Source of the DNA: Gekko japonicus
Lineage: Eukaryota
DNA: 64,000 nt
Direction of reading: 5' to 3'
Assembly: GCF_001447785.1 (NCBI RefSeq)
Contig: NW_015167585.1
Span: 1-64,000, forward strand
Position 1 is the stretch's first letter, and the number at the start of each line of letters is the position of its first letter. Below are positions 8,213 through 64,000 of the stretch, in pieces. The notes below the pieces were generated by a model. That model saw nothing but the letters and a program-made list of their open reading frames with translations, searched no databases and was not told the DNA's origin. Position numbers and translations under genes: made by a program.

Positions 8213-8342
8213 TCAATAGCGGCGACTGAACCGAGGATCGCTGGGCCGGCTCCCTCTGTCCTGCCCTGAGAAGCCTTCATCTTCTGCCTCTCCACCATGC
8301 GAGGCTTGGCCCTCTGTGCTGCTGGGCACGAAGCGACCCCGC
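8213..8342 (-). CDS. SAFB: SAFB exon 21 coding part (stop TGA)
   Basis: cttag|[42 protein letters not shown]. Confidence 0.93.
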
Positions 8343-45510: not shown

Positions 45511-45740
45511 CGCGACTGGCGGCTCGGATCTTTCTTGCCCCCGTTCGCAGCAAGGGCGGCGGCCGAGGAAGAGCCCACTGTCCCGTCTCGCCCACCGCTC
45601 CCTCAGACAAAATGGCGGGAAGGCACCGGCCGTCGAGAGACACAGGCGGAGAAGCCCTGCGCACGCGCGAAGGCACGGGGCCGTGCGCGCCTGCGCGGAG
45701 GGGCGGGGCTCTCCTTTCCTAGCCTGGAAGATCGCCTGAG
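45060..45740 (-). promoter_or_regulatory. CpG island / promoter of SAFB, with YY1 (CCGCCATTTTG, 45608-45618 minus) and NRF1-like motifs (45658-45668, 45687-45696)
   Basis: Very high GC and CpG density around exon 1; motif matches read directly. Confidence 0.8.
45313..45510 (-). CDS. SAFB: SAFB exon 1 (ATG, SAP domain)
   Basis: MAAPESEC...LLERLRR, then donor AGA|GTCAGT; lies in a CpG island. Confidence 0.95.
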
Positions 45741-45789
45741 CCAGGGGGCACCTTTAAGACCAAGGAAGTTAAATCCTGGGTGTAAGTCC

Positions 45790-45898
45790 CACTGCTGGAC
45801 CTCCTGATGGCACCTGGTATTTTTGGCCACTGTGTGACAGAGTGTTGGACTAGATGGGCCATTGGCCTGATCCAACATTGGCTTCTCTTATGTTCTTA
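45790..45898 (+). mobile_element. CR1 3' tail directly upstream of the SAFB promoter
   Basis: Matches the other copies. Confidence 0.82.
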
Positions 45899-47454
45899 TA
45901 AGTTTTCGTGTACAAGCACAGTTCTTCAGGTATCTTGAAACAGACTTCCTCAAGCCTTACATATTGCGGGGGGGTTAGAAACAGACTTCCTCAAGCCTTA
46001 CATATAGGTATAGGGTTTCTAACCCTCCACCCTCTTTCTACCCCTACGTAAGGCTTGAGGAAGTCTGTTTCAATGTATCTGAAGAACTTAGCATGCATAC
46101 GAAAATGTACACCCAAACTTTGAACTGTTGCGTCAGGGCAACACAGCTACCCACCAGATTAGTAGGGAAATATGTCATCCTTTTGCTTTTCAAAATATTA
46201 TAACCCTAACATAAGATTATTGCAAGGTGCCCTGAACCATGACGAAGGCTAGTACGGAAATGTTTTAATAAATTATCATGAGGGACCTTTTAAAAAAAAG
46301 GAACCGAACTGTAGTCTATTCCAATGCTCATCATATGTATTATCCTGCTCTTTCTGCATTGTTTTCTACTTTTGTAATTCCACTTTCTCTGTTTATGGTA
46401 TATTGAGTCTGACACCTTTCTTAATTTTTGAGATCCTAGTCATGTGTCATTGTTTATTGGATCTTTGTGCTGTCTGAGTACAGTATTCTGTATGTTGTGA
46501 TCTGCCTTGAGTCTCAGCAAAAAGGCATATACATTTATTTACAGATTTCTATAAATTTAATTGTTGTGTTTTAATTATGCATGTTTTATTCTGTATTTAT
46601 GTTACCCGGAAGCCACCCTGAGCCTGCTTTGTGGGGAGGGTGGGGTACAAATTTGATAATAAATAAATAAATATGCTTTTTATGATTGAGACTCAAAACG
46701 ACTACATAGAAGGCATTAAATAAAATTTAAGTACAGAAGGCATTAAAATAAATTTATTTTGATTTTAAGACTACAAAATTAGAAAACAAAATTAAATACT
46801 AGTATTATATGACAGTGCAATAAAACTGGATTTCAGAATTAGAGAACATGGAAATAAAAAGTATATATCCAGTAAATACAAAATGGAAATCTAATTTCCA
46901 CACATTAAAAATAGAATCCTATTGCTTTTATAAAAAGCCCTCTTCAGCAATTCTGGTTCACTGAAATCTTATTTTATTTGATACGTATAAAATCTTTAAT
47001 TGCAAAATGTTAACAAGTATACCCAATTCCCTTTATAAAAATGCCCTCTTGAACTCCTTCGTTCTCCACATTTAGAGGAGGTCCAATTTTTTTTTTTTAA
47101 ATACCTAGCCTGAAAAGAATTCTGCATGGTCTTAGTTAAATGTGGGCATTCTGGCAACGATATAACGGTAAGAAACAGGAGTCTAGTAATGCTTAAAGGC
47201 CCAATAAAGCTTATTTCAGAAGCTTTCGTGGATCGCAGCCACTTGTCTTCAGATGGAAGTCCTCTCATTGCAGAGGGATAGAGCGGCTCCATCTTTTGTG
47301 TTTTTGGTCAGTCACACAATCGAGTTTGCCTCTTTGCCATCCCATGGGCCTGTATCACACCAGGCCCTCCTCTCTTCTACAGTTTCTCCATTAGGCGTTT
47401 ACACGGCAACTGGAAGTGTTACTTCATGTACTCTTCCTCAATGGCCTCCATTTT

Positions 47455-47825
47455 TGTTGTTGTTCAGTCGCACAGTCAAGTGCGACTCTTTGCGACCCCA
47501 TGGACCAGATCACGCCAGGCCTTCCTGTCTTCCACCATCCTCTGAAATTGGCTGAATTTCATGGTTGCATGGACCAGATCACACCAGGCCTTCCTGTCTT
47601 CCGCCATCCTCTGAAGTTGGCTGAATTTCATGGTTGCATCTATGACACTGTCTAACCATCTTATCCTTTGCCGTCCCTGTCTTCTTTGACCTTCAATCTT
47701 TCCCAGCATCAGGGTCTTCTCCAGGGAGTGCCCCTTCTCATTTGGTGGCCAAAGTATTTGAGCTTCAGTTTCACTATCTGGCCTTCCAGAGAACAGTCAG
47801 GGTTGATTTCTTTTAGGATTGACTT
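47455..47825 (-). mobile_element. BovB (RTE clade) LINE 3' fragment with an internal tandem duplication of about 60 bp
   Basis: MLGKIEGQRRQGRQRIRWLDSV; CAA-repeat tail. Confidence 0.88.
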
Positions 47826-48049
47826 TTAGGATTGGCCTCCATGGGAATGACCAAAAAATGCAGCGCACGCGCACTACCTTTCTGTGTGTAGGGCTAGGGA
47901 AACGAAAGGAGTTGTGTGAAATAAGTAGAAAGACTTGCTTGAACGAATGCATGTTCTCGCAGTTTCCTAATAAGGCCCTTTATCTTTATTAACTTTCAAA
48001 AAAGGGCATTTATTGCTTAGGGATAAATAATTCCCAACGCTTGAATATC

Positions 48050-48790
48050 CGTTCTGTTCTTTGGACGCATCCGGGCTCTTACGTAAGACGGACCCTCTCT
48101 CCAGACGCATGCGCCGCTCTCCCCTATTAGCGTATGACCACATCGCTTGCCAGCGGCGTTTTCTAGGCGCCTAACTCGCGGCTGAGTCTGCGCGTGCGCA
48201 AGAGCATTTCCGACGCGCTGGTCAATTTCTCGCATGCGCACAGAAACACTGGCCGCCATTTTGCGCGCCGCTTCAATCAGTCTTTCTGGTTAAAAAAAAG
48301 AAAAGAAAAAGTAAGCCAAAAACGAGACTCGTCAATGGCGTCGGAGAACGAGGTCGGACTCGTCGCAGAGGCGACAATACCCCTCAGCGGCGATGGCGCT
48401 GCAGAAAGCCCCGGGGGTGGCGCCGCTGTGGGGACGACGACGGTGCGGCGCCTCAGCGACCTGCGAGTGATCGATCTGAGAGCCGAACTGAAGCACCGGG
48501 GCCTGGACACCGGTGGGAATAAGAGCGTCCTTCTCGAGCGGCTTCGGAAGGTAAAAGCTTCACTGAGGGGAGAAGGGAGCAAAAATCCCCTAGAATAAGG
48601 GGAGGAGGGTTAAACCGGCTCTGCGCATGTGCGTTGTGCGAGGCCCGCTACCCTGCGGTAAGTAAATGGCGCCTCAGGGTTCCATTGAGCACGTGACTCC
48701 TGGACGGTCTCGCGGGTCACGTGGCCGTGGCCACGTGGTTTGCGGTAGTTTTTTGGGGGTGCGTGGCCTCTGGCACTGCGCCGTTAATTA
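48050..48790 (+). promoter_or_regulatory. CpG island / promoter of SAFB2, with YY1 (48253-48263), NRF1-like motifs (48106-48114, 48189-48200, 48231-48240) and three intronic CACGTG E-boxes
   Basis: CpG-rich; motif matches read directly. Confidence 0.8.
48335..48550 (+). CDS. SAFB2: SAFB2 exon 1 (ATG, SAP domain)
   Basis: MASENEVG...[35 protein letters not shown]|gtaaaa. Confidence 0.93.
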
Positions 48791-51700
48791 ATTGCACGTT
48801 TATGTAATAATATATATATAAGAGAGATTAGGGTTACCCGATGTCCTCTTTTTTACAGTGCTTGTGTTCTTTTTTGTGTGTGGTCCTATTTTGGGCTCTT
48901 TTTAAAAAACGGATGAAAATGGCCTCTTTTTGGGTTGGAAGGTTAGGAATGTTCCTAGTGAGTAGCCATGATCACAGCTTAAAGAGGAGGGGTATATAGA
49001 AGGAGACAGGTAATCGTGATCGCTTGTTTGAAGTGGTGGGACACATGGCCTCTTTTTTGCGGTTCAAAATATGGTAACCCTATGAGAGATGTCTTTTTGC
49101 ATTGTAGTTATAACTAACTGCAGCCACCACCACACCCTAAATTAAGTTAAATTGCATAGCATACTAAAAAGAATAGGAACTAGAAAGGGGGGGGGGGAGA
49201 CCAAAGGCTGGATAATGACCAATGACTGGATAACAGATTAATTTGTTGTCGTTGTTCAGTCGCACTGTTGAGTCTGACTCTTCAGGACCCCATGGACCAG
49301 ATCATGCCAGGCCTTCCTGTCTTCCGCTGTCCTCTGAATTAATTATGCTCCTCGGTTTCCAAAGAGGAGGGAAAATCATTCCAGCCAGGGCTATTTTTGG
49401 GCAGGAACGCACAGGAACGGAGTTCCGGCTGGCTTCAGAGTTGGCCACACCCACTACAGCCAAAACCTCTGTGTGGGAGGCTACAGAGGGAAGGCCTGGA
49501 GGGTGACACCCCCCCCCCCGCGACTCCGAGGCCAGCAGGCCAGGGGGTCCCTGGAAGGATTAAATGCCTCTCCGTGCCTTCCCTGGCCGCGGGGTGCCCA
49601 GACAAGCCAAGGGAAGGCATGGGTGGTGTCGCCTAATATGCTAATGTGTTTCTGCTGTTGGGTGTGACCTATTATGCTAATGAGAGGTTGGTGCAAAGTC
49701 ACCAATTGAATTTGATGGCAAAGTGGGGATTTGAACTCGCGTCTCCCATATCGTACTCTACTCTTCACAACGAATTGGCTATTCACTGCATTGATAGCAG
49801 CTATTAGTTATGGTGGCTACATGGATCCTCTGTGTTCAGTGGCAGTCTACTTTTTGGATTGGGGGGGGTGGCACAAGCAACCAGCCCAAGCTATGGCTTT
49901 TGTGTTCTGCTCACGCTTGTAGCCAGGAATTTCTAAGTCAGGGGGCATTTTAATTCTTGGGGGGGGGGCACTGGCTAAATCAGTTAAAGGTAACTCACAT
50001 GCTTCAGCTGACCCCAGAGAGAGGTGTGGTGCAGGGAGAGGGCAAGGAGAAGTGGCAGCGCAGGGGGAGTCCGTGGCAGCCATCGCATCCTGCCAGAGAG
50101 TTGGGGTGGGGCCTGGGCTGAAAGGAAGTTGGGGGGCATTGGCAGGAAGCCCTGGGGCCAGGCCCCAAAATGCCCTACTGTACCTGTGGGCCTGGTTCTG
50201 CTTTTGAGCTTCCTGGGAGCATCTTGCTGGTCACTGCTCAATTCAGGCTCTTTAGATAGAGACACTGTTCATATAATCCTGCAAGAGTGATTTTGTGTTA
50301 GATGCCCCTTAGATTATAGCTCTTTAGTAATATACTCTCTGCACTGTCCTTCCTCATACGCTTACTGCTCCTTATTGGGCATGGGGAGAAATGCCTCAAA
50401 CCCTGTGTGGTCAGAGTCCCTCTAAATGAAGTTGTAGGCTTCACTTTCCGGGGGATGGGGCTTTATTGCTTTGCACAGCACTGTCTCTTTCCTCACTGGC
50501 CAGTTGTGTGGTCAGACCCACTGTAACTTGACATATCCATTGAGGCATCCGGGAAGCTGTCCTTCTGGGAGTCTTTCTCTGGCTTGCNNNNNNNNNNNNN
50601 NNNNNNNNNNNNNNNNNNNNNNNNNNNNNNNNNNNNNNNNNNNNNNNNNNNNNNNNNNNNNNNNNNNNNNNNNNNNNNNNNNNNNNNNNNNNNNNNNNNN
50701 NNNNNNNNNNNNNNNNNNNNNNNNNNNNNNNNNNNNNNNNNNNNNNNNNNNNNNNNNNNNNNNNNNNNNNNNNNNNNNNNNNNNNNNNNNNNNNNNNNNN
50801 NNNNNNNNNNNNNNNNNNNNNNNNNNNNNNNNNNNCTTAATTCTTCACTTCTGTTTCTTTCTGCCTTTCTCCTCTTGCTGTTTGTTCTTATTTCCCTAAT
50901 AGCCACAGCCCCATCTCCTAGGTCAGACCTGACCCTCTGAGGGAGGCATGACTGGTTCCACACTGTGATGCCACATCACCCCCATGTGCCTTCTCCCCTT
51001 TGGGCTTTGCTTTTGAGAGGTTAAACAAAGTTTGAGTCCAGTGGCACCTTTAAGTCCAACTAAGTTTAATTGTGGGTATACATTCGTGTGCATGGACTCA
51101 AACTTTGTTCTGTGCTTCTGATCAACATGGCTGCCCACCTGAATCTGTTTTTTTTAGAGGCTGTGGGCTTTGCCCCTAGGCTGATATATGAGCCACCTAG
51201 CTGCCTGTCCCTTTGCACCCTGTCTGTTTTGTTTGCCGTCCTGTCTAGGTAGGTCTAAGGCCTATAATGCAGTCAGGAAATAAAAAGAATCTACTTTCAG
51301 GATTGCCTGTTGAGGACATGGATTTTGTAGGACAAGGGACTAGTGAATGTGATTTATGAATGTGATTTCTTTCATATATCTATACTCTCCCTGGACTCCA
51401 ACTGTGTGTTCTTTATTCGGCCCCAGGAGCCCACGGGGCATAGATTTGTGCATCTATTTCAGATCCACGTTGGTGCCTCTTTGTATGTACTGTTCGACAA
51501 CATCTCATAAATATTGTAGCTTTGTGACATACACATATTACAATCTTATTAAGATCTCAGTTCTAACTATACAATTAACCAAACTTACCGTAAATGCAAA
51601 AATATAGCTCAAAAATAAATCATTTTTTTAATACAGTGGGTTATTTGGAATAATTTCTTTTTCAAGCATAAAACTTATAACAGGGTACCATACTGTGACC

Positions 51701-54700
51701 ATGTTTTAATTGCAATTTTCTGGTGATGAATTTCGATATTTTTTTTTTGCATTATAAAACATTCCCATATATGATTATACCATTGTGTAAGTGTTGGGGG
51801 TTTCTTGTCTAACCATCTAAGAGCAACAAGAATATGTGCTGTTGCTATATGAATGTAATATCTGATATTTCTCTTGACATGTAGAATGCCAGCTGCCACT
51901 GTGCCTTATTAGCATTTAGCCTAGTAAGAGGAGATTTAGAATAGAATCAATTACAGTATTATATTTATTGGTTAGAGGTGGGAAAGACTGGCTTTTTGTT
52001 TTTTACTGTTCTGGAAAAATGTAGAAAATTTGAGACTAGAATATATGTAATATTTACTTTACTGTAGGAGCCCAGGCTAACCCAATCTCAGGCAAGATCG
52101 ACAGTGGTTAGTAGTTGGATGGGATACCACCAAAAAATACCAGGGTTTCTATTCAGAGGCAGGCAATTTATTGGTTAGAGGTCCTTTTTTAGATTCACAA
52201 AATATTAGAATGGAATGTACACTTTGAAATTATAAGCTTCCCAGCTGAAGGACATCCTACAGCAAAGTTATGAGATGGAAAGACCCTGAATGTTCCCAAA
52301 ACAATATCTTTCTTTACAGAGCAGAGAATCTGGCACCGGGAAGTCTGCCAAGAGCTAAGTTGTATGCTTCTTATCAGGGAAGTCCCAATTTTTAGGTTGA
52401 AGCAAATAGGTCAGGAATGATGCCAAAAGAAGGCCTCTTTGTTCGTTGATGTTCTCCACTGTTCCGGGACCAGATAAGCAGACGTAATTACTGACACTTA
52501 TGATCAACGAAGGAATATGCCAGTAGAAAGGTGCCGGGTCAAATGATGCTCTGATGATGATACCTATTGGACACCAATTAGGGATTTCTTTCTGTGTAAA
52601 CTGTCATGATGTCATTTGGGGTATAAGATCTACTGCCCTTCCTGGCTGGGGCAGAATACAGCTTGGTGTTACTGGGTGCCAAGGGCTCCAGTCCTGTATT
52701 TTCCTAATTATTGCAATAATCATATATTTATACTCTCCCTGGACTCCAACTGTGTATTCTTTATTCGGCCCCGGGAGCCCACGGGGCATAGATTTGTGCA
52801 TCAATTTCAGATCTACGTTGGTGCCTCTTTGTATGTACTGTTCGGAGAAGTAAGGTAGATTGTAGCCTGCCTTCTGAGTAATAAATAGCCCTTAATGTTG
52901 CTCTCAGTAAATCTGAGAGTGAGTAAAACTGTGGAATACTGTGGAGTGTGCTTATGTGTCATTGCATGTGGCAAGCTTTGTGATAATTGGATAAAATTGG
53001 CCGCCTAAAGTCCTGTCATGTCACTTAATGATACATCTTTGAAATCCTACCAGTTCAAGTCTGTTTTCTAATCAGTTTCTAATCAGAATCATTAACGTGA
53101 TTTAAAGCTTTAAAACGTAATCTTTCTGGCCTTTTACAGAACCGATGGTTTGCACAGATTTTTCTGCTCTTGATAGAGAAGATAGCTTTTTTTTCTCGAT
53201 TTGGTACATGGTTCCAAGCACAGATCAGGCTCTCCTGCCCACCCGTGCCTTCAGATCTCCAGAAACCACGTGGTGCATCAGCTATTTGTCCACACAGGCG
53301 GCAAGCCTTGGAGGTGGTTTGTGAAAGGGGTGGAGTGGCCTACCTTGGAACAATAAGAGACAGTGTGTTTCACAAACTTGCTCTCGGTGTTGTTTGGGGT
53401 TTACTTTTTCTTTAGGCTCTTCTGCACGAAACACAGTGGGCCTCTATCAATAAGCAGTTGATTTTGGTCTGTCTTGTAGGCAATTGAGGAAGAAGGAGGA
53501 GATCCTGATGAAATTCCAGTGGTGTCTGAAACAACCCTTAAGAAGACTCCCAAAAGAAATAGCAAAGGTATGCAAGGGAATGCAGAGAACTCCACCTCTG
53601 TCCACATGCTGCTGTATTTTGCTTGTTTTGTTCAGTAGTGAACAGTTGAACTGAGCTGTGCCAGCTAGACTGTGTACTCACCCCAGAAGTGGAAGCAGTG
53701 AACGCTTTCTGAAGGCCTCCGTAGGTAGGCTGATTTGTCTGTAAAGCCACAACTGCACTGTGTGCGTTTTAACCCAGAACTGCTTCTCAGTCTCTCTGTC
53801 CACTTTGCCATGTCAGTGACAGTCCCTCAGACTCAATTTTCACAAGCAGCAGGTGAGATTGTCCAGGCTGTGGCACTTGAGGTTACAGACTGCGCCAGCT
53901 AATCAATTGGAGATGTAGGCATAACACTAGATGCTGGTGAGGCTAGCCTTTTCTTTGACACGCAAGTTGAATATGGCTGGGGAAATAGGAGGAGCGGCTT
54001 TTTCACATGGCTGCATCAGACAGAGATGAGACAGTGAGCTTGCCTCTCTTGGCCAGTTTGGGGCGAACTCTGACCCCACGCCCCGAATCTGCTGCTGCAG
54101 CCATTTTGTCTGGTCATTACGGAACAGTTCTGCACGTTATTTAAGTATCTGAATTTACTTTCCCACCCTTTCTTCCTGGCCCGTTCTCCTGTGTTCTGTG
54201 CCATGTTAAATATAGATCAGCATCATTATAAAAGTATATTAAAACAATGCTTTATGCGGCGAGAACTGCAATAGCATCAAAATGGAAGAATCCAAACTCA
54301 ACCACTATCCAGGAATGGTTCCAAAAACTTTGGGACCAATACATAATGGAAAGTATTACTGGAAAATGTAATGCTGCAAAAACCAACCAGCCCGATTTGA
54401 GGTTTAGTGCAAAGTGGTTTCCTATTCTTACCTTCTTAGAAGCAGAACAATACATACCACCCTCTTGGAAGAAATATATTGATTGGCTCTGAAGGAAATT
54501 GAAAGGTAGAATTTTTCTTAACAGGGACATGAGGATATATCCTATTACAGATAAGTTTAAACTATAATAGGTCAATAATCTACATAATGAAAAGTAGTGT
54601 TAAAAGGTCTGCCAAAGCTTAATATTTACCTGATTTATTGCTAAAAAAATTTCTCCTCTGAAATATAATTATATCCAGTACAATATTGAGATTAGTTAAA

Positions 54701-57700
54701 TGTTGAATATATATTTGTTCTTGATGATTGATGTATAGATTATGTTGTTATTAGTACTAGCTAATTTTTGTTAAAATTGAAGTGGTTTTATCTTACTTTA
54801 ACAGTTGTATGCATTTTTAATACTTCAATAAAAAAGTGTTTAAAAAAAAAGAAAAGAAGTAAACTGCCTTGAATGCAGTTACCTTGGCCTGGGTGGCTAG
54901 GCTAGTCCGATCTTGGAAGCTAAGCAGGGTTGGCCCTGGTTAGCACTTGCGTAGGAGACCACCAAGGCAGTCCAGGGTCATGACACAGAGGCAGGCCACC
55001 TGGACATCTCTTGCCTTGTAAACCCCATGAGGCATCTCTATAAGTCGGTGGTGACAACACTTTCCACCACCATACCTTGAATACAGTACCTGACTGTTCC
55101 CTGGAAGGCCAGATCCTGAAGTTGAAGCTCAAATACTGTGGCCACTCACTGGAGAAGAAGACCCTGATGCTGGGAAAGACTGAAGGTCAAAGAAGACGGG
55201 GACGGCAAAGGATGAGATGGTTAGACAGTGTCATCGATGCAACGAACATGAAATTGAGCAAGCTTCAGAGGACAGCGGAAGACAGGAGGGCCTGGTGTGA
55301 TCTGGTCCATGGGGTCATGAAGAGTTAGACTCGACTGTGCGACAACAACACCTTGAATCCAATGACAGAAAGGAGAATACTGGTCTATGACCGTAATAAA
55401 CTTGAAAACTAATGACAGAAAGGAGGAACGTAAATGTATTGAATGAAGAAGGTGGTCAGCAGAGTGTTTTTTAAAACATTTCCACGTCTTCTGTTTGTTC
55501 CCTTTCTGACCTCTTTGGGAACGGGATGCCCCCAAATATTAGGAATTATGCGAGATCCGACTTAACCGTTGTATATTATGTCGCTGTAACTATTTGTGTT
55601 TACGATATTTAGCCTGCCTTTCTCACTGAACTCAGCTGAACTCTCATACTGTCCGTGTTTTCAATGTGCATAGGCCATGAAGAGTAGTTTTATGCACGCG
55701 TGCCCTGCTTTGAATTCTAACGACAGCGATCTCTTTTAGGACGTAGGCCGGAGGAAGAAGGTGTCGAAGACAATGGTCTCGAAGAAGATTTTGGAGATGG
55801 ACAGGTACAGCTGGCCCAGTACTGAAGCTGCAAAGTAACAGTTCTGCGTCCTGCGTCCTGACTACTGTCACACATGCTCTTTTTTTCCTTTTTGCAGGAG
55901 GATATTGAAGCAAGTTCGGATAACTTGCAGGATGTTGACATGATGGAAATTAGTGTGTTAGATGAAGCTGAAATAGATAACAGCAGTGCAGTAGAGTGCC
56001 GAGCAGCTGGCAGTGCCGATAGTGGGCTCGACTCTCTCTCTGACAGTAAAGGAAATGCTGGGGCAGGAAGGAAAGAACATCCACAGCAGCTTGCAGGATG
56101 CCCTGCAGGTGACATGGAGGCACCTCCACAGTCGCCGGGCATTAAAGAAGACCCGAGAGAAATACCAGTAGCTGTGGTATGCATCTCTACTCCAATGTGC
56201 AGAATCAGATCAATCATCGCAGTAACCTCTTTAATTTTTCTCAAAATAGACTATAAAAAGGGGGGGGATGTCTAAAAATAAACACAGAGTCCCCCCCCTT
56301 TTGAAAAAATGACCATAATCATACCATTTTTGACTAAAACCTGAAAAAGTTAAATGCATGAATCATAAACATTGTCTGTAGTAGCAATAATTCAGAAATC
56401 TGGTTTTTTTAAATAGTTGAATGCTCTTTTTTTTTTTTTTACCACATGCATTTCTGCTCATTCACCTTTTTGTGTGTGTTCATGTTCAAGGGGACTGCAG
56501 TTACATTTTTTACTTGGTCGAGCCCCAGGGTGTTTTGTTTCCAGGCAAACGATAGCCTTGTTCCCTGTCTGACTTCCTTGGGTTCAGGATGCCCCCAAAT
56601 ATGAGGAGAGAGTTGACTTAACCGTTGTATATTATGCAGGGGTAATCGCTTGCGTTTATGATCTTTAGTTTGCATTTCTCACTGAGACTCAAGATGGTTT
56701 ACAGGGGCGTAAGTCAGTGTGATCAATAGTTAGTGGATTTCAAAACCCGATTTCCCAGCGAAACATTTAGGGGTGGTCCCATTCTGTCCCCACTCCCGCC
56801 TCAGTATTTTAATTCCAGTTTGTGAATCGTTTCAACCTGCCTGAGATCTCGGGAGGGAAGGCAAGTGCAATGAATGCAAAGTTATTGCTTTTAGAACTGT
56901 GTTTTGAAAACCACATTAACAAATTTGAGTGTGCCCTAAAAATATCACTTCTTGGAAATTTTTCATCCTAAACCTGCAGCCCAGCCTGAGCAGGCATGTG
57001 CTGTTTGTGAAGTTGCTTGTTACACAAGTTGACTAGGCTGGCTGTTGTGGCAAGATACGTTCATCGTGCCAGGCTGTCATTTGCACCTTTGGTTTTTACG
57101 CTGTGCCGTGGGGAACTCTAAAGTTCCTTGGAAGCTTATTGGAGGCTTTTTGATGAGAAGTGTGCTTTCTCGTGCATACCCCAGACTGCTCTGCGGTGTG
57201 CTAAGCTCTGAAGGGATAAGCTCCTTCTTCTCTGAGCAGGAGTCTTGTGGCAGGCAGGCCCTTTCATCCACCAGTGGAGGCAGGACTTGTAAACGCTTGA
57301 GACTTCACCCCTGGAGGGGGGTCACTCTCCATTTTGGAAGTTCTGCAGCTGTGGGAAAAACAGCCAGGCTAAAAAGAATGCAAAGCTGTGGTGTGGGATT
57401 GGACTGATTATGGGAAATACCCAGCGCTATCCTAGATCTGGATGCCCTGTTACACTTGAGAAGAACCAGCCTGTGTGGCATAAGCCTCATGTTTTGGTTC
57501 ATCCAGCCACACATGTCCCATGATAACAGTGTTCTGGTCCACTCAAATGGGGGCATGTCCCATGATGGGGCACTCAATAACAGTGTTCTGGTCCACTCAA
57601 ATGGGGCTTGCACTGCGTCCATTGCACCAATTATTGCAGCCCCCTCCTGCCAAAAGTAAGCCATTAAAGCCCCTGCCTGTGCTGGTGGATGAGGGCTGAC

Positions 57701-60700
57701 TGCTCACCCCTGGGTTATTGCCTGTCTGATGGGGTCCACGGAGTGGGGAAGTTCTGATAACCTGGAGAGCAGAATGACCCCTGAAGGAGGGCTGGTGTCC
57801 GTCTTGACTCTGTTCTTATTTCACCCCAGTTGTGAATTTCCTGAGCAGCCTGTATCAAGCTTTGCTTTTATCCCCACCCCCTACCCTACCCCAATGCAGT
57901 AAGTGTGAAGAGTCGCCTGTATCAAGCTTTGCTTTTATCCCTACCCCAATGCAGTAAGTGTGAAGAGTAGTGGGCTGTCTCACAGGGTACTTGAGGATGG
58001 GGTGGTGGTGGGACTCTAAAACATACTACACTTGTATGGATTGGATAACATACCGCTTGATAGATTCCGGTGGGTAGCCATGTTGATCTGAAGCAGTAGA
58101 ACAAAGTTTGAGTCCAGTGGCACCTTTAAGACCAACAGAGTTAAATTCTGGGTATAAGCTTTCCTGTGCATGCACACTTCTTCAGACCACGAAAGGTTAT
58201 ACCCAGAATGCCACTTGAGTAACAGTACAGTAATGGTACTGTTGTGGCAGTTAATGAGTCCAGTTCTACGGTTCCAATCAATAAATCACAGATTTGTGAT
58301 CAGCCACAAAGAGCTAGAATTTTGCTTTCCCGCTGTGGTTTGTGTTAACTGTGTTATGTGAACCGACATCCGCTGTTATACTTCCAAAGCAGTCCCTGCA
58401 TGGGTGTTGTGAGCAACAGAAAATGTATACCGGCGAGGAACTGTGAGTTGTGACTTGTACATTTGGAAGCCTAATCTTCTGCTTAGTGCAAAACACGGTT
58501 CGGTGTTAGTTCCAGAGGGGTGTGGTGGTTTGGTGTGATAAGTGAATTGAGCTAGTGAGGGCAGAACTCCGTGCCTGCCAGTGGGGAGAGGGAGCAGATG
58601 GTGAAGAATTGACTGTCCAGAGCTGCAGCCCTATGCATGCTTACCTGTGAGTAGGATTTGTTTCTGAGTAAATAGACAAAGGATTGCACCTTATAGCAGT
58701 CTGGAGAGAATGTGTCCTGTTTAAAATTCGTTATGGGCATGGTCTATTGAGACTCTGCTCTCTTGAGTTAGCAGTGCACTGGGGGCAAGCGAAACAGCGT
58801 CTCCTTCCCCAAATGTGTCAAGAGGATTCTTCTTCTTTGTGCAGATGTGCTAGGGACTTAGAGAAATGCCATCGAAGTTCCTTGCCACTTTTCTTCATCT
58901 CCCCTGCCACCCTTCACTTCATTTCTTGCTTTTCAAAAAACAAATTCTGTCTGTTAAGCACGCTGCTTGTTTAATTCAAGCTTCTTTCAGAATAAGGGGT
59001 CATCATAAGGCCCAGGGGATCTTATCCCTCATTCTGGCCTGTCTTTCCTTGACAGTCGTCTGTTACAGCTGCTCGTGTACTTCTTTTAGGTCGAAGGTGA
59101 AGATGCTGGAAGCGCCATGGAGCTGGGAACTTCTGATTGCACCAGTGCAAAGGTAAAACGGTTTAAAAATTCCTGACTGATCTTACAGTAATTCTGAAAA
59201 GTTGCCGAAACAACTGTTGGAAAGTTTATGATGCAAGAAGACCCTGACTTGCAACCTGCTCGATAGGTGGGTAGTGCGTCATTCAGAGCAGCGGCAGCGT
59301 TGGCCAGATGACTCCTGCCCATGCGGTAGCCAAGAGTGGACTCGGCAGGAGACGTGAGCCGGGGCCTGATGTGGTGGATAGCTGGCTTCCACTCCTGGCA
59401 GTGGCGGGCCTGTAGGATCTCTGCATGTATTTGGAGCGACACACAGCTGGCTGGTAGTAACTCCCATGCGAGAAAGGGAAGACGGATAGAAACTGGCTAG
59501 TGATGAAACAATTGGCCAGTCGCTCGAAGAAGCACGAGTTGTGCCCAGTTGGTCAGTTATCCGTGTCAGCGTGTTTGACTCTGAAAGTGGGCAGCGCTTA
59601 AAGGCTGCAGTCTGAATTGGGATAGTCCCCATCCATGTTCCCTGAGGCCAGAGGAACAGATCGGCCAGGTTTTGACTACTAAGATGTAATGACGTTTATG
59701 AGTACGTAAATGCCACAAATAAGTCCGCATCAACACAGTTTGCGATTCACTCCTCACTGTAGCTGCAAACACAGAAGCCCCCAAGTGTTGAATGTGGCAA
59801 GATGGTGTTACGTCCTTTGCTTTGATCTTCTGTGGAGTGAGCTGGAGCTAACCTACATGGGCCGGTTCTAGGCAACTTTCCACGCAAAAGGGAAGTGGAG
59901 ACACCACCCCCTACATCCATCTGTGGTGGCAGAGACCAGCAGTGGGGAAAGGATTCCAGAGCCCAGTGCAGACTTCACAAGCTCAGCTGCCTCAGTTCTG
60001 CCACGCAAGGGTGAAACTGGCAGCAGCGTGCGGGCCCAGAAGGGAGCTGCAGCTTGGCAGCGGAGCATGGCACCCTTGTGGTCTAGATATGCCATTTGCT
60101 GGCCTATTTTCTATGCAAGAGTTTTAGTTCCTCTCCACAGGGGCACAAGTATTCGGCAGCGGAGCATGGCACCCCTAGAAATGCCATTCGCTGGCCTATT
60201 TTCTGTGCAAGAGTATTAGTTCCTCTCCACAGGGGCACAAGTATTTAGTGCAGTAAGACTCTTCTGCTGTGCAAAGGGAGGTGATATAGCACTGCCACAG
60301 GAGGTGGCGGCAGCTACTAGCATGGACAGCTTCAAGAGGGAATTAGATAAGCATATGGAGCAGAAGTCCATCAGTGGCTATTAGCCACAAGGTATAGATA
60401 GGAACTCTCAGGCTGGGGCAAGTGATGCTCTGTATTCTTGGTGCTTGGGGGGGGGGGCAACAGTGGGAGGGCTTCTAGTGTCCTGGCCCCACTGGTGGAC
60501 CTCCTGATGGCAGCTGGTATTTCTGGCCACTGTGTGACAGAGTGTTGGACTAGATGGGCCATTGGCCTGAACCAACATTGGCTTCTCTTATGTTCTTACA
60601 TGCTCTTAAAGAGTGCATGGTTGATGAAGATTTGTGTGAATTGAGAGGAGAGCGCAGGAAGTCTAGAGTGGCTTCACAAGACTAGAGTCTCTTTCACACA

Positions 60701-63479
60701 TCCTGAATAACACAGTTTCGGTCCACTCCAGCAACCATTTGCAAGTGGATTTTGCCATTTCACACAGTGAAATCAAGCTGCAAAGTGCATTGAAAGTGGA
60801 TTGAAAGTGCATTATGTAGTGTGTGTGAAAGCGCCCTTGGTTGACTATGTTTGTCCTTGTTATTTTGAAGCAGAAAACAGAAAATGTGCCTCCAGGGTTG
60901 TGAAGTGTGCAGACGGTTCATGTTGGCTTTTAAGTAACCATAATAGAACGCTGTCTCTTTAATTGCAGCCCCTAAAATATGGGAATCGGTGTCCTGTAAT
61001 GACGGAGAGCATGCATACCTCTCCTTGGCCACAGTCCCATTGGGTGGCGTTCGCTAAGCTGTTACTCGCTTGTTGTCAACGCCCTCCCCCCATCTTTGAT
61101 ATGGGAGTACTAACCCTGATCTGTCTTACAGCTGGGCTGCTAGAAGGAATTAAAGGGCTGTTGAAGCATGAGTTTTTTTACAAGCCAAATATTAGAATTA
61201 TTGTCAAACATTTCACTAGGGGTGTGTGCAGTCATACTGCTGCCCTGATAAAATGCCTGGTATTTGCAGATCAGCAATGGCCGATTTTTGCACCACACCC
61301 TCCTGATGATCCCTGATTCCAATGATTCTACTCCTGATAATACCAGAATTGGGAATCGTGTTGGAGAGACCGCAGGAGCAGCGAGGGAGGAGGGGGCATG
61401 CCCTGTGGTGCACTGGCCCTTTACATTTTAAGGGGCCACTGTTGTCTGTGGGTGGAAGAGGCCCAGTCTCCCGCCCATTGGAAATAATGGTGCTTGGAAG
61501 CAATGCTCCCTCTAAGCTGTGGAGTCTTGTGAGCAAAAATTCTACTTTGCGAGCTCCTCGCCTTAAAGCTGTGAGCGAGCGGTTTGGCTGCTGCATAAAT
61601 TAGTCTGCTCTGCAGCCCTCCTTCCTGAGCAAAGACAGAAATGTGTGAGCTGGAGGCTAAAAAACTGAGTTTAAAGGACCAGTGCACCCTGGACGAGTGA
61701 GTGCGTCCCTGCTCCTGCTAACTGAATCTGGGAGTGGGGGGAGTCCAGGTGGTGGGGACTTCCAAATTATCATTTTAGTTTCCTTTGGTAAATTAAAAAA
61801 GTGTATGAATGCTGTTTTCACTAAATTAGGAGTACTGTTCCAATATTTATTAAAGTGGAAAATTTTCCCAATGTGACTTTCCAGAATGAGAACAGCATGC
61901 CCGTCCCAATTTTTTGAATTGCACATTCCCTAGGGGGCATTATTTCTTCAGCTTTTATTTCCTCCTGACCTCTCAGCATGAGATGGGGTAACATATTTCT
62001 TGTTTCTTTTTCTTTTTTTTAAAACTAATAGGAACTGGAAGAATTTCCTCTGGAATCAGGTACTGTTGCTTAGAAACATGCTGGGCCCCTTCCTTTTACC
62101 TCCCCGCATATTTTTCACTCACAAAATCCCTTTAGTTGCTTAAAATATTTGGTTTTATTCCATTAATAACTATGGTGTATTCTAAATGGTGCACGATCCA
62201 GCTCTCTCGCACACGCACCCCCCAAAAGCCACAGAGATTGGAAATCTGGTCATATCAGCAGATCTGCTATAGCATGCTCATTCTTGCATGAGGCAAATCT
62301 TTGGAGAGAAATGAGCAATTTGCTTGCTTCCTTGGAATTGGCGGACGAGCTGCCCTTGACAGGAGCAGTTCTGCATACAGAGCAGGTCTTGTGATATGAC
62401 CTAGTACCTTGATTCTGTAAATCTTAGACTAGAGAAGGACAGTTTAGTCTAAAGCAGAGAGTAGGGAATGAAAACAGGACGTCGAAGACAGAAGACAGGT
62501 TCATCGCAAAAACTGTGCTTTCTGAACTGCAAACGTATTGTCATTCCATCTGAAGCTGGTCTGGTTTTCATGTTTGGACTGATTCATCTGAAAGGAGTTC
62601 AGTAAACCTGGAAGCTGTACTGTCAAAAGGACTATGTAAACATCCTGGACTTTGAAGCTAGACTGCAGAAGAAGGACAAAGTTGAGATGACTACATGAAG
62701 ACAGTGAAATAAAAACAAGCCGGGAACATCGTGCATAAAAGGTGTTTTTAAGCCATTTTCTTCTTTCTTTCAGACAGTGCTCTGCTAGGTATGTTAGACT
62801 GCAGTGAGCTTAGGCGTTTGAATGTGATGTACGCAAGGGTTTTCCAATCTCTGTGTGGCATTAGACTGGCAGCCATGCCCGTTCCGCACTTGTCTTTGCT
62901 GTGTTTCCCTGGTGATTAAACCTTGTGCCATTCTATTCCTGTTAAATCCATAGAAAATGAGAAAATGCTCGACATTTTGGGTGACACTTGTAAATCTGAG
63001 CCCTTTAAAGAAGACACTTCCGAAGCGGAGCAGGCACAGGAAGCGAAAAGCCCGTTGGCGGGCAAAAAGGCAGCGGAGGAAGAGGAAGACGCGATTGCCA
63101 CCGCCGCCCCTCTGTCGGAAGAAGACCTTTTAGATACGAAGAGCCCCTCCGCCCCGGCTGCGGGCGGGAAGGAGGAGGAGGAGGAGGAGGCAAAGCACTT
63201 AGTGGTAGCGGCAGGGGAGCCGAGCGAGCAGACAGGCGAGGAAGCCCAGCCGGACTCGGACTCTGTAGCGGTAGAGAGCAGGAGTGGTGGTGGAGGAGGA
63301 GGAGGAGATGTTGATGATGAGGGTAGCAAAACAGCAGCCCAGAGTCTGGAAGCCAGTAGTGAGGCCAGTGCGGCCAGCCAAGAGGCCGCGAAGACGGAAG
63401 AGAAAGCTCAGTGTGAGGAAGACTCCTCCTCTGCCACTAGAGAGGCCTCTGCCCCAGAGGGTGGTGATCAGAACACGAG
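48335..63479 (+). CDS. SAFB2: Scaffold attachment factor B2-like, partial (exons 1-7; gene continues beyond the window): join 48335-48550, 53480-53567, 55740-55804, 55898-56176, 59090-59152, 62032-62059, 62954-63479
   Basis: Exon-by-exon paralogue of the minus-strand gene, with the same lengths (88, 65, 63, 28, 526 nt) and phases. Head-to-head arrangement as for mammalian SAFB/SAFB2. Named SAFB2 by exclusion. Confidence 0.88.
48829..49082. mobile_element. hAT-type MITE (TAGGGTTACC TIRs)
   Basis: TAGGGTTACC...GGTAACCCTA; TSD AGAGAGAT/TGAGAGAT (7 of 8 match). Confidence 0.78.
50588..50835. other. Assembly gap (N run)
   Basis: Run of n. Confidence 0.99.
51373..52844 (+). repeat. 124-bp direct repeat (51373-51496 and 52721-52844)
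   Basis: 5 mismatches in 124 nt by hand alignment. Confidence 0.85.
51560..51900 (-). mobile_element. L1-clade LINE 3' fragment
   Basis: [22 protein letters not shown]2 C-terminal motif, AT-rich UTR. Confidence 0.7.
53480..53567 (+). CDS. SAFB2: SAFB2 exon 2
   Basis: tgtag|[29 protein letters not shown](G)|gtatgc. Confidence 0.94.
54200..54850 (+). mobile_element. L1-clade LINE 3' end
   Basis: [25 protein letters not shown]-rich UTR, AATAAA and poly-A at about 54826-54850. Confidence 0.8.
54880..55070 (+). mobile_element. 5S rRNA-derived SINE
   Basis: 5S-like head plus shared body. Confidence 0.72.
55075..55350 (+). mobile_element. BovB LINE 3' fragment
   Basis: [37 protein letters not shown]; CAA tail; a short further piece at 49243-49340. 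Confidence 0.88.
55740..55804 (+). CDS. SAFB2: SAFB2 exon 3
   Basis: tttag|[22 protein letters not shown]|gtacag. Confidence 0.94.
55898..56176 (+). CDS. SAFB2: SAFB2 exon 4 (279 nt)
   Basis: tgcag|[30 protein letters not shown]...REIPVAV|gtatgc; the phase-0 donor was chosen to match exon 5. Confidence 0.85.
59090..59152 (+). CDS. SAFB2: SAFB2 exon 5
   Basis: tttag|[21 protein letters not shown]|gtaaaa, 63 nt. Confidence 0.88.
60290..60598 (+). mobile_element. CR1 3' end fragment
   Basis: Matches the other copies. Confidence 0.85.
61501..61685 (-). mobile_element. hAT MITE, same family
   Basis: Reverse complement of 13531-13735. Confidence 0.7.
62032..62059 (+). CDS. SAFB2: SAFB2 exon 6 (28-nt micro-exon)
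   Basis: Long pyrimidine tract, aatag|ELEEFPLES(E)|gtactg. Confidence 0.9.
62954..63479 (+). CDS. SAFB2: SAFB2 exon 7
   Basis: catag|[17 protein letters not shown]...GGDQNT|gtttgt, 526 nt, near-identical to SAFB exon 7. Confidence 0.94.
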
Positions 63480-64000
63480 GTTTGTTTTTTCTGCGTTTTA
63501 GACCAGATGCTGTCTTTTTTCCTCTCCCCTCCCCATTGGTCGTTTTATGAATGCAAAATGCGAATGTCTCAACCAACCCCCGGCCAGGGCCATAACAAAA
63601 TGTATAGTTTTATTCTAAATAGAATCTTTAGTTGTTTCTGCACACTTCTTTTTTTTTCTTTTTTTCTTTTCTGGTGTGGGTTTTGCTTTTTGGTAGAAGA
63701 TGGCTTGATTTCTTTTTCTTAAACGCTTGTTTTAATTCTCTGTTGTCTAAGGTCACATACTTTAATGTGAGCTGTTAGCTCAATTTGGTCACCTTTGACT
63801 TCGCTGATTTTTTTTTTTTAATTCTAAGGAAAGCTCTCCCCCGCCTTTTGAAAGGCGTAATTCTTATTTTGCAGTTCATTTTCTTTTCTGGTAGGTATCT
63901 GATCAAAGCCCACAGGGCCTTGCTTGCCCTTTTTAATGTGGCCTCTTTTCATATTTGAGTAACATTCAGGTTTTTTGTCTTTAGTTCGAATGTGGATCCA

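What the first reader, a model, noticed from the sequence alone, without database searches (positions are those of the whole stretch)
62810..63520. Exon-7-restricted concerted evolution (gene conversion) between the inverted SAFB and SAFB2 paralogues
Seen: 62810-63520 is the reverse complement of 32193-32903 (positions sum to 95713 at every anchor checked), with 14 mismatches in 711 bp (about 98%). The tract includes 144 nt of upstream intron (2 mismatches) and about 41 nt of downstream intron. By contrast exon 2 differs at 23/88 nt, exon 6 at 11/28 nt, exons 4-5 barely align, and other introns carry unrelated repeats. The homogenised exon encodes a low-complexity acidic/Gly/Ala linker, the part least expected to be constrained, and silent and intronic sites are shared, so protein-level selection alone cannot explain it. 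Inference: recent gene conversion between the arms of a 30-kb-spaced inverted repeat. From memory, human SAFB1 and SAFB2 are also almost identical to each other across this exon while being very different from the lizard sequence. If so, the same exon has been re-homogenised independently in separate amniote lineages, a persistent single-exon conversion hotspot that keeps one module matched between otherwise diverged paralogues.
Basis: partly seen in the sequence, partly recalled or inferred. Interest (0 to 1): 0.88.

Follow-up and report, generated by a model that had tools for sequence, protein, structure and literature searches.

The report
One exon kept identical between SAFB paralogues
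Two head-to-head SAFB-family genes of a gecko are anciently diverged except for one 526-nt exon plus its intron edges, which are 98% identical, and protein comparisons show that the same exon alone is kept matched within species in 22-23 of 24 mammals and squamates, a long-lived single-exon island of gene conversion.

Summary
Window 62810-63520 (+) is the ungapped reverse complement of 32193-32903: 711 nt, 14 mismatches. It covers coding exon 7 (526 nt) of two divergent SAFB-like genes, plus 144 nt of upstream and 41 nt of downstream intron. Outside the tract, identity falls to background within about 10 nt.

Exon 7 has dS 0.058. The other shared exons have dS about 1.1.

The window is Gekko japonicus. 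Two NCBI proteins, P0172 and P0175, map to it at 100%.

I compared both paralogues in 24 species (9 mammals, 15 squamates).
- Exon-7 identity within a species is 77-100%, and at least 91% in 22 species. The N-terminal part is 40-78% identical and the C-terminal part 60-78%.
- The step sits at the exon-7 borders in every species.
- The exon-7 tree groups paralogues by species in 23 of 24. The N and C trees group by paralogue. Holding one squamate paralogue class together on exon 7 is rejected (p 8e-53).
- Between species exon 7 evolves as fast as the rest or faster, so constraint cannot explain the identity.

Recurrent non-crossover gene conversion is the best explanation. Advanced snakes appear to have escaped it.

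The kind is known, but I found no paper describing this case. Reads and other species' DNA could not be obtained.

The parts
62810..63520 (+). Homogenised tract, right arm: exon 7 plus 144 nt of upstream and 41 nt of downstream intron of the right-hand SAFB-like gene, which NCBI names 'SAFB2-like' (P0172).
   Evidence: 711 nt, 14 mismatches against the left arm. Identity falls to background within about 10 nt beyond both ends. A gapped alignment extends the tract to 62803.
32193..32903 (-). Homogenised tract, left arm, in the left-hand SAFB-like gene, which NCBI names 'SAFB1-like' (P0175).
   Evidence: Reverse complement of the right arm; coordinates sum to 95713.
62954..63479 (+). Coding exon 7 of the right copy. 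It is 526 nt, starts in phase 1 and has 174 whole codons (62956-63477). It encodes an acidic, Gly/Ala/Ser-rich disordered segment between the SAP and RRM domains.
   Evidence: P0172 residues 247-421 map here at 100%. Translation. No Pfam family. AlphaFold2 mean pLDDT 54.5 with no secondary structure.
32234..32759 (-). Coding exon 7 of the left copy: the same length and an intact reading frame, with 5 amino-acid differences from the right copy.
   Evidence: P0175 residues 215-389 map here at 100%. Translation.
48335..62058 (+). Exons 1-6 of the right copy: E1 48335-48550, E2 53480-53569, E3 55739-55804, E4 55895-56179, E5 59090-59152, E6 62032-62058. All are anciently diverged from the left copy.
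   Evidence: Exact peptide mapping of P0172. Nucleotide identity to the left copy is 44-74%, and pooled dS is about 1.08.
33646..45510 (-). Exons 1-6 of the left copy: E1 45510-45313, E2 39004-38915, E3 36296-36231, E4 36128-35925, E5 35446-35384, E6 33672-33646.
   Evidence: Exact peptide mapping of P0175.
8216..31783 (-). Exons 8-21 of the left copy, covering the RRM, the Glu/Arg-rich region and the Gly-rich tail. The stop lies near 8216.
   Evidence: Pfam finds an RRM at residues 417-485 and a SAP domain at 34-69 of P0175.
63983..64000 (+). Start of exon 8 of the right copy. The window ends here.
   Evidence: P0172 residues 422-427 map here. The piece is only 56% identical to exon 8 of the left copy.
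45511..48334 (.). Spacer between the two divergent start codons. I presume it holds the shared, bidirectional promoter.
   Evidence: This is inferred from the head-to-head exon maps. A bidirectional promoter is described for the human pair in PMC4582101. It was not tested here.

Best explanation
Two SAFB-family paralogues sit head to head, with their exon-7 copies 30 kb apart in inverted orientation. The genes have been separate at least since before the squamate radiation, and seemingly since before turtles and squamates split. Their other exons are near saturation at silent sites, and their introns no longer align.

Exon 7 is the exception. I infer that a break in one copy is repeatedly repaired from the other copy without crossing over (non-reciprocal gene conversion). 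Each event re-copies the exon and as much flanking intron as still matches.

I infer that the island sustains itself for three reasons.
- Exon 7 is much the longest exon: 526 nt, against at most 294 nt for any other.
- High identity makes the next conversion possible.
- The diverged introns stop the tract, which produces the sharp edges.

The process has run independently in each lineage of mammals and squamates. It seems to have lapsed in advanced snakes, where the two exon copies are drifting apart.

Shown: the tract, its borders, the silent-site contrast, and the species-wise clustering of exon 7 against the paralogue-wise clustering of the rest. Inferred: the repair mechanism, why this exon, and neutrality.
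For: In the window:
- 711 nt at 98.0% identity with sharp borders.
- dS 0.058 and dN 0.014 in exon 7, against pooled dS of about 1.08 in exons 1-6 and 8.
- The intron flanks inside the tract differ at 2 of 185 nt.
- The mismatch deficit in exon 7 has P = 5.5e-47.
- The mismatches are clustered, leaving clean stretches of 235 and 209 nt (P = 0.0016). This is what overlapping sub-tracts, fast-mutating (GAG)n and (GGN)n runs, or both would give.

Across species, paralogue identity as N part / exon 7 / C part:
- platypus 68/100/78
- wombat 78/99/75
- seven eutherians 59-67/98-100/65-72
- Eublepharis 60/100/72
- Elgaria 61/99/69
- Anolis carolinensis 58/99/60
- Gekko 60/97/66

The step coincides with the exon borders in all 24 species.

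Trees:
- The exon-7 tree pairs the paralogues by species in 23 of 24 species, mostly with strong support.
- The C and N trees split by paralogue class.
- The AU test rejects one paralogue class as a clade on exon 7: delta lnL 925, p 8e-53.

Against constraint as the cause: between species, exon 7 changes as fast as or faster than the rest. Platypus-hippo is 52% in exon 7, against 57-71% (N) and 76-80% (C). The two Anolis species are 77-80% in exon 7 against 86-93% elsewhere.

Against crossing over: N and C classes always pair the same way in all 24 species, so no net crossover has become fixed.
Against: - All cross-species evidence is at protein level. I could not see silent sites or intron flanks in any other genome.
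- This window comes from a gapped assembly (three runs of N in the window), and I could not check it with reads.
- The two ends of exon 7 (ENEKxLDILGxTCKSE and ESSxxEGGDQ) are conserved across amniotes. About 30 nt before the acceptor and about 20 nt after the donor also look conserved between bird and gecko. Some of the identity is therefore selective constraint.
- The GC3 signal expected from biased conversion is weak. Exon 7 has GC3 0.56, against 0.22-0.47 in neighbouring exons but 0.60-0.78 in the 3' exons.
- The mammalian AU test is only marginal (p 0.048), because 7 identical pairs had to be left free.
Confidence: 0.9

Rival explanations
1. Conversion supplies the copying, but selection is what keeps the island alive. 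Under this reading the two paralogues need an identical disordered module, for instance to co-assemble or to share a partner. Converted haplotypes are then favoured and diverged ones removed.
For: - The pattern persists through at least 23 separate lineages of mammals and squamates.
- The tract ends at the same exon everywhere.
- A published domain scheme of the human proteins marks this region as 'HD, homologous domain in SAFB1 and 2' (10.1101/858647).
- Conserved short motifs sit at both ends of the exon.
Against: - Both genes remain as intact annotated proteins where the exon copies have drifted apart. In exon 7, Erythrolamprus is 77% and Tiliqua 85% identical; Crotalus a versus b is 87%, while orthologues are 96%.
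- The exon evolves fast between species and is predicted to be disordered.
- No function is mapped to it. The ERH-binding motif and the minimal microRNA-assisting fragment both lie downstream of the RRM.
- Exon length alone is enough to explain the persistence.
Confidence: 0.2
2. There is no conversion. Exon 7 and its flanks are held identical in both genes by very strong purifying selection at the nucleotide level, for example as a splicing-regulatory or ultraconserved element.
For: - The splice-proximal intron reads nearly the same in gecko and bird when translated: CHSIPVKS before the acceptor and RFVFS after the donor.
- Both ends of the exon are conserved across amniotes.
Against: - The body of the exon is the least conserved part of the protein between species. 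Gecko versus mammal is about 40% and platypus versus hippo is 52%.
- The exon-7 tree follows species, not paralogue.
- Identical drift in two independent copies is not what constraint predicts.
- Rfam finds no RNA family in the region.
Confidence: 0.03
3. Assembly or annotation artefact. Under this reading one exon-7 copy was pasted in from the other by a short-read assembler, or gene models borrowed the exon from the neighbouring gene.
For: - The window has gaps (N runs at 26186-26249, 44919-44944 and 50588-50835), which suggests a scaffolded draft.
- The two ends of the tract are perfectly identical.
- I could not lay reads on it.
Against: - The two copies differ at 14 sites and sit in unrelated flanks. 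Each has intact splice sites and neighbouring exons of its own gene.
- The same exon-limited identity appears in 24 independently assembled genomes. In many of them both genes lie on contigs or scaffolds of 10-430 Mb.
- A gene model takes its residues from the DNA at its own locus, so borrowing an exon is not expected.
Confidence: 0.03

Closest known systems
Concerted evolution of the mammalian HSPA1A/HSPA1B (Hsp70) pair and the inverted Hsp70 pairs of Drosophila (recalled from memory, not checked here)
   Same: Two neighbouring paralogues are kept nearly identical within species by repeated gene conversion over long periods, while orthologues diverge between species. The tract is limited to coding sequence plus a little flank.
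   Different: In those cases the whole intronless coding region is homogenised. Here a single internal exon out of about 21 is converted, the rest of each gene is saturated with change, and the converted piece is a fast-evolving disordered segment rather than a conserved chaperone.
Arm-to-arm gene conversion in inverted repeats and palindromes, such as the human Y-chromosome palindromes (from memory)
   Same: The copies are inverted on one chromosome and homogenised by intrachromosomal non-crossover repair, with sharp edges where homology ends.
   Different: Palindrome arms are tens to hundreds of kb long and more than 99.9% identical. Here the 'arm' is 0.7 kb, embedded in two otherwise unalignable genes separated by a 30-kb spacer that holds both promoters.
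Partial, exon-limited conversion between paralogues, for example HBG1/HBG2 with a conversion border at a simple repeat, OPN1LW/OPN1MW, and RHD/RHCE (from memory)
   Same: Conversion covers only part of the gene and produces a mosaic of young and old segments. Simple-sequence runs lie at or inside the tract.
   Different: Those pairs are young, or are converted over several segments. The SAFB case shows one fixed segment kept matched in monotremes, marsupials, eutherians and most squamates.
The 'HD, homologous domain in SAFB1 and 2' in published domain schemes of the human proteins (10.1101/858647, Fig. 5A legend)
   Same: It sits in the same place in the protein, between SAP and RRM, and is recognised because the two human paralogues are especially alike there.
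   Different: In the text I read it is only a label in a figure legend. The papers I could search give no evolutionary explanation, exon mapping or cross-species analysis. I did not compare human sequence.

Membership tests
Interlocus (ectopic) gene conversion / concerted evolution of paralogues | Within the tract, paralogues of one species are closer to each other than to their orthologues in other species. | tested here: met
   The exon-7 tree pairs the paralogues by species in 23 of 24 species. The AU test rejects paralogue monophyly in squamates, p 8e-53. This is protein-level evidence.
Interlocus (ectopic) gene conversion / concerted evolution of paralogues | Outside the tract the same genes group by paralogue, so the duplication is old. 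| tested here: met
   The C-part and N-part trees split the squamate copies into two classes, each of which includes turtles. They also split mammalian B1 from B2. Pooled dS of the other exons in the window is about 1.08.
Interlocus (ectopic) gene conversion / concerted evolution of paralogues | The identity extends to silent and non-coding sites. | tested here: met
   In the window, dS is 0.058 in exon 7 and the intron flanks differ at 2 of 185 nt. This could not be tested in other species because their DNA was not obtainable.
Interlocus (ectopic) gene conversion / concerted evolution of paralogues | A discrete tract that is statistically distinct from its surroundings. | tested here: met
   Identity steps from 98-100% to about 50% within about 10 nt. 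Hypergeometric P = 5.5e-47. The GENECONV program itself was not run.
Interlocus (ectopic) gene conversion / concerted evolution of paralogues | Conversion events are seen directly, as shared polymorphisms between copies or de novo events. | not testable with these tools
GC-biased gene conversion signature | GC3 is raised inside the tract relative to the rest of the gene. | tested here: inconclusive
   GC3 is 0.56 in exon 7, against 0.22-0.47 in exons 2-6 and 8 but 0.60-0.78 in several 3' exons.
SAFB family (SAFB1 / SAFB2 / SLTM type proteins) | An N-terminal SAP domain, a central RRM, and a Glu/Arg-rich and Gly-rich C-terminal half. | tested here: met
   Pfam finds SAP and RRM_1 in both gecko proteins. 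The proteins map at 100% to the window. Their database relatives are named scaffold attachment factor B1 or B2.

The most novel reading that the evidence does not exclude
The exon-7 island is more than a self-sustaining by-product of exon length. On this reading it is kept by selection because the two SAFB paralogues must carry the same fast-evolving disordered module, for example to mix in the same assemblies. Conversion would then be the mechanism that lets the module change over time while staying matched between the two genes. Advanced snakes would be a natural experiment in which the requirement was lost.
Probability: 0.2. Interest if true: 0.78.

Novelty: new member of a known kind. Interest (0 to 1): 0.64.

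Why it matters
The case gives an unusually clean natural example of how far gene conversion can be localised and how long it can last. One exon stays matched between paralogues in monotremes, marsupials, eutherians and most squamates, while the genes around it diverge to saturation.

Practical consequences:
- Phylogenies, orthology calls and dating of SAFB and SAFB2 that include this exon will be misled.
- Antibodies, probes, guide RNAs and short reads aimed at this exon cannot tell the two genes apart.
- The inverted 0.7-kb repeats could in principle mediate inversion of the shared promoter block. That would swap the 5' halves of the two genes. I found no fixed case.

The apparent escape in advanced snakes offers a way to measure what happens once conversion stops.

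Tried and rejected
Every cross-species statement is therefore protein-level.

**Ideas tested and not supported**
- Module swapping. If crossovers between the inverted exon copies had been fixed, N-terminal and C-terminal classes would be re-paired in some lineages. They are concordant in all 24 species, so this is rejected.
- An embedded structured RNA. Rfam finds nothing in 61500-64000.
- A folded domain in exon 7. There is no Pfam hit and AlphaFold2 predicts disorder.
- ERH binding as the function of this exon. The motif lies at residues 567-588 of human SAFB2, downstream of the RRM.
- GC-biased conversion. The signal is inconclusive.

**Left open**
- The AU tests do not reject species clustering of exon 7 in snakes (p 0.11 and 0.26). 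The 'escape' rests on tree support and identity comparisons only.
- The gene trees are unrooted because no amphibian, fish or SLTM outgroup was retrieved. Whether the mammalian and sauropsid pairs come from one duplication is unresolved.

Exon 7 was searched by reference, and full-length database proteins by id.
- P0007 looks like a primate SAFB2 (judged from memory of its length). P0006 is an unnamed mammalian fragment from a 991-bp Logan contig.
- I used P0006 and P0007 in one protein comparison, and P0007 as one of four tblastn queries that mapped exons on the window. I looked up the cluster names of P0006.
- After that I left both out of all trees and conclusions. No human DNA was fetched or compared.
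Full report
**1. The observation**

The repeat finder lists arms 32193-32903 and 62810-63520: 711 nt, 98% complementary, 29,906 nt apart. It is much the longest inverted repeat in the window. A direct count gives 14 mismatches in 711 ungapped positions, and the coordinates of paired bases always sum to 95713.
- Two mismatches lie in the upstream intron part (62846, 62857).
- Twelve lie in the exon, all between 63093 and 63311.
- The last 209 nt have none.

In 50-nt steps beyond either end, ungapped identity is 16-48%. A gapped alignment of the whole exon 6 to exon 8 interval extends the tract by at most 7 nt (to 62803). Identity then sits at about 50%, the level a gapped global alignment gives for unrelated sequence. 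A sensitive blastn of one half of the window against the other finds no other long high-identity paralogous match. It finds only short exon matches at 74-88% and interspersed repeats.

**2. What the tract is**

The open frame 62956-63477 encodes 174 residues of acidic, Gly/Ala/Ser-rich sequence. The partner arm encodes the same with 5 substitutions.

A search of the 50%-identity protein library with this peptide returned SAFB-family proteins. Three further searches seeded with full-length database proteins gave about 180 named vertebrate SAFB1 and SAFB2 sequences.

Two Gekko japonicus proteins map to the window without a single mismatch, exon by exon. The window is therefore G. japonicus, and the gene structure is known.
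- P0172 ('SAFB2-like') is the right copy on the + strand. Its exons are E1 48335-48550, E2 53480-53569, E3 55739-55804, E4 55895-56179, E5 59090-59152, E6 62032-62058 and E7 62954-63479. E8 starts at 63983, where the window ends.
- P0175 ('SAFB1-like') is the left copy on the - strand. It runs from E1 45510-45313 through E7 32759-32234 to the last exon at 8341-8216.

The genes diverge head to head, with 2.8 kb between their start codons. The human pair has the same layout (PMC4582101).

Both proteins carry a SAP domain and an RRM. The exon-7 peptide hits no Pfam family. AlphaFold2 with a 37-row alignment predicts no structure for it: mean pLDDT 54.5, pTM 0.12. Rfam finds nothing in 61500-64000.

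**3. Contrast with the rest of the gene, inside the window**

Codon-aligned comparison of the two copies:

| Exon | Nucleotide identity |
|---|---|
| E1 | 68% |
| E2 | 74% |
| E3 | 71% |
| E4 | 72% (plus a 27-codon length difference) |
| E5 | 44% |
| E6 | 59% |
| E7 | 97.7% |
| E8 | 56% |

- Silent-site divergence (dS) is 0.058 in exon 7. Pooled over the others it is about 1.08, near saturation.
- Of the 227 mismatches in 1182 aligned coding positions, 12 fall in exon 7's 522 positions. The hypergeometric probability is 5.5e-47.
- The intron sequence inside the tract differs at 2 of 185 positions.

The mismatches are not evenly spread. Two clean stretches of 235 and 209 nt are unlikely under a uniform scatter (P = 0.0016). 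Several differences sit in (GAG)n and (GGT/GGA)n runs. Newer sub-tracts at the ends, fast-mutating simple repeats in the middle, or both would explain this.

GC3 of exon 7 (0.56) exceeds that of its neighbours (0.22-0.47) but not that of the 3' exons (0.60-0.78). A biased-conversion signature is therefore not established.

**4. Other species**

For 24 species in which both paralogues were retrieved, I cut each protein at the borders of the gecko exon. I then compared the paralogues within each species.

| Species | N part | Exon 7 | C part |
|---|---|---|---|
| platypus | 68 | 100 | 78 |
| wombat | 78 | 99 | 75 |
| seven eutherians (bats, carnivores, hippo, narwhal) | 59-67 | 98-100 | 65-72 |
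| Anolis carolinensis | 58 | 99 | 60 |
| A. sagrei | 53 | 96 | 62 |
| Elgaria | 61 | 99 | 69 |
| Podarcis raffonei | 58 | 99 | 67 |
| Eublepharis | 60 | 100 | 72 |
| Paroedura | 57 | 98 | 72 |
| Gekko | 60 | 97 | 66 |
| Lerista | 74 | 96 | 69 |
| Hemicordylus | 40 | 94 | 71 |
| Liasis | 57 | 93 | 68 |
| Phrynosoma | 65 | 93 | 60 |
| Pogona | 60 | 93 | 68 |
| Euleptes | 57 | 91 | 69 |
| Tiliqua | 62 | 85 | 72 |
| Erythrolamprus | 61 | 77 | 60 |

All values are percent identity between the two paralogues of one species.

In all 24 species the identity steps up from 18-65% in the 20 residues outside exon 7. The last 20 residues of the exon are 95-100% identical in every species. The first 20 are 91-100% identical in 23 species. 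The exception is Erythrolamprus (20%), where one annotated model lacks the normal exon start.

**5. Trees**

- The exon-7 tree (60 rows) joins the two paralogues of a species as sisters, or as identical rows, in 23 of 24 species, mostly with strong support. The one exception is the python/colubrid pair.
- The tree of the C-terminal part splits the squamate copies into two classes, each with 15 species and each joined by turtles. It also splits mammals into B1 and B2.
- The N-terminal tree gives the same classes.
- Forcing one squamate class to be a clade on exon 7 costs 925 log-likelihood units (AU p 8e-53).
- The same test for mammalian B1 is only marginal (p 0.048), because seven species have identical pairs that the test leaves free.

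**6. Why constraint cannot be the cause**

Between species, exon 7 is as variable as the rest of the protein or more so.
- Platypus versus hippo: 52% in exon 7, against 57-71% (N) and 76-80% (C).
- Wombat versus hippo: 64%, against 67-81% and 80-81%.
- The two Anolis species: 77-80%, against 86-93%.

Only the ends of the exon are conserved across amniotes: ENEKxLDILGxTCKSE at the start and ESSxxEGGDQ at the end.

Contig-derived open reading frames that run through the exon show a second, separate conservation. The roughly 30 nt before the acceptor and roughly 20 nt after the donor read almost the same in a bird and the gecko when translated. That part of the flank identity is ordinary splice-signal constraint. 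The remaining 110-120 nt of upstream intron identity is not explained that way.

**7. Mechanism (inferred)**

Non-crossover repair of a break in one exon copy from the inverted copy 30 kb away re-copies the exon and any flank that still matches.

Exon 7 is 526 nt. No other exon exceeds 294 nt. It is therefore the only stretch long enough to stay above the identity and length that homologous repair needs once the introns had diverged. High identity invites the next event, and diverged intron stops the tract.

Crossing over between inverted copies would flip the promoter block and re-pair the 5' and 3' halves of the two genes. The N and C classes are concordant in every species examined, so no net crossover has been fixed.

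**8. A lineage that seems to have escaped**

Among 12 snake species, exon 7 of vipers, elapids and colubrids sorts by paralogue. Support (bootstrap/SH-aLRT) is 90/98 for one class and 83/98 for the other.
- Crotalus class a versus class b is 87% identical, while Protobothrops a versus Crotalus a is 96%.
- Pseudonaja b versus Naja a is 89%, while Ophiophagus a versus Naja a is 98%.

AU tests do not reject species clustering there (p 0.11 and 0.26), so this is suggestive and not proven. If real, it shows that the exon diverges quickly once conversion stops. It also shows that both genes remain annotated with complete proteins when unmatched, which argues against a strict need for identity.

**9. 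What is known**

- A published scheme of human SAFB2 marks an 'HD, homologous domain in SAFB1 and 2' between SAP and RRM (10.1101/858647).
- Reviews and papers describe more than 70% overall similarity and a bidirectional promoter (PMC4582101).
- Full-text searches for SAFB or SAFB2 together with 'gene conversion', 'concerted evolution', 'GENECONV' or 'homologous domain' found no paper that explains or analyses this. The single co-occurrence concerns amplified SAFB2 copies on gorilla acrocentric chromosomes.
- Subscription-only papers, including the 2003 paper that first described SAFB2, could not be searched.

**10. Limits**

There was therefore no read support for this assembly and no DNA from other species.
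- The trees are unrooted. In them mammalian B1 and B2 are sisters rather than orthologues of the two sauropsid classes. The names SAFB and SAFB2 for the gecko genes are therefore only labels, and the number of duplications is open.
- P0006 and P0007 (mammalian, possibly primate) were used in one protein comparison. P0007 also served as an exon-mapping query on the window, and the cluster names of P0006 were looked up. Both were then left out of the trees and conclusions. No human DNA was handled.

**11. Verdict**

Exon 7 of the two SAFB paralogues is a conversion island, shown here in monotreme, marsupial, eutherian and squamate lineages. Gene conversion between paralogues is a well-known kind of process, and this is a striking, apparently undescribed member of it. 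It is notable for being confined to one exon that encodes a fast-evolving disordered segment, and for having persisted across deep amniote lineages.

Noticed in passing
window 62926-62953 and 63480-63500, and the partner positions 32760-32787 and 32213-32233: The last roughly 30 nt of intron 6 and the first roughly 20 nt of intron 7 translate to CHSIPVKSI and RFVFSAF. Almost the same strings flank exon 7 in a bird-derived contig ORF ([10 protein letters not shown] ... RFVFSPL). An unnamed mammalian contig ORF carries the downstream one only (RFVFSQF). The splice-proximal intron therefore looks conserved across amniotes, apart from any conversion.
   Followed up: partly
proteins P0003-P0184, C-part and N-part trees (no window coordinates): Mammalian SAFB1 and SAFB2 are sister clades (SH-aLRT 98). 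The two sauropsid classes are not one-to-one with them: class b (with birds and pleurodire turtles) lies next to mammals, and class a (with cryptodire turtles) lies outside. This points either to separate duplications or to whole-gene homogenisation in stem mammals. There is no outgroup, so it stays unresolved. Only class b was retrieved for birds.
   Followed up: partly
snake proteins P0133-P0181 (no window coordinates): In vipers, elapids and colubrids, exon 7 sorts by paralogue, and the copies are only 77-89% identical. Conversion seems to have stopped in advanced snakes. In the skink Tiliqua the copies are 85% identical.
   Followed up: partly
window 47295-47801, 49242-49338 and 55089-55350: A repeat unit of about 90-100 nt is present in several tandem copies in the spacer between the two start codons. 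It recurs in direct orientation in intron 1 and in inverted orientation in intron 2 of the right copy, at 74-95% identity. It could be a mobile element or a promoter-associated tandem repeat.
   Followed up: no
window 60290-60598, 34246-34547, 1451-1686, 2394-2581, 31307-31473, 45788-45898 and 12367-12665: An interspersed repeat of about 300 nt has at least seven copies in the window, at 70-96% identity. Copies lie about 0.7-1.3 kb on either side of the left exon 7 and 2.2 kb upstream of the right exon 7. None lies inside the converted tract.
   Followed up: no
window 45313-45510 (exon 1, left copy): Exon 1 has GC 0.73 and GC3 0.89, far above the rest of the gene. This is consistent with a CpG-island promoter shared by the divergent pair.
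   Followed up: no
window 62956-63003 and 63442-63477: Conserved short motifs sit at the two ends of the otherwise variable exon: ENEKxLDILGxTCKSE and ESSxxEGGDQ. They are nearly invariant from gecko to mammals and are candidate binding motifs of unknown partner.
   Followed up: no
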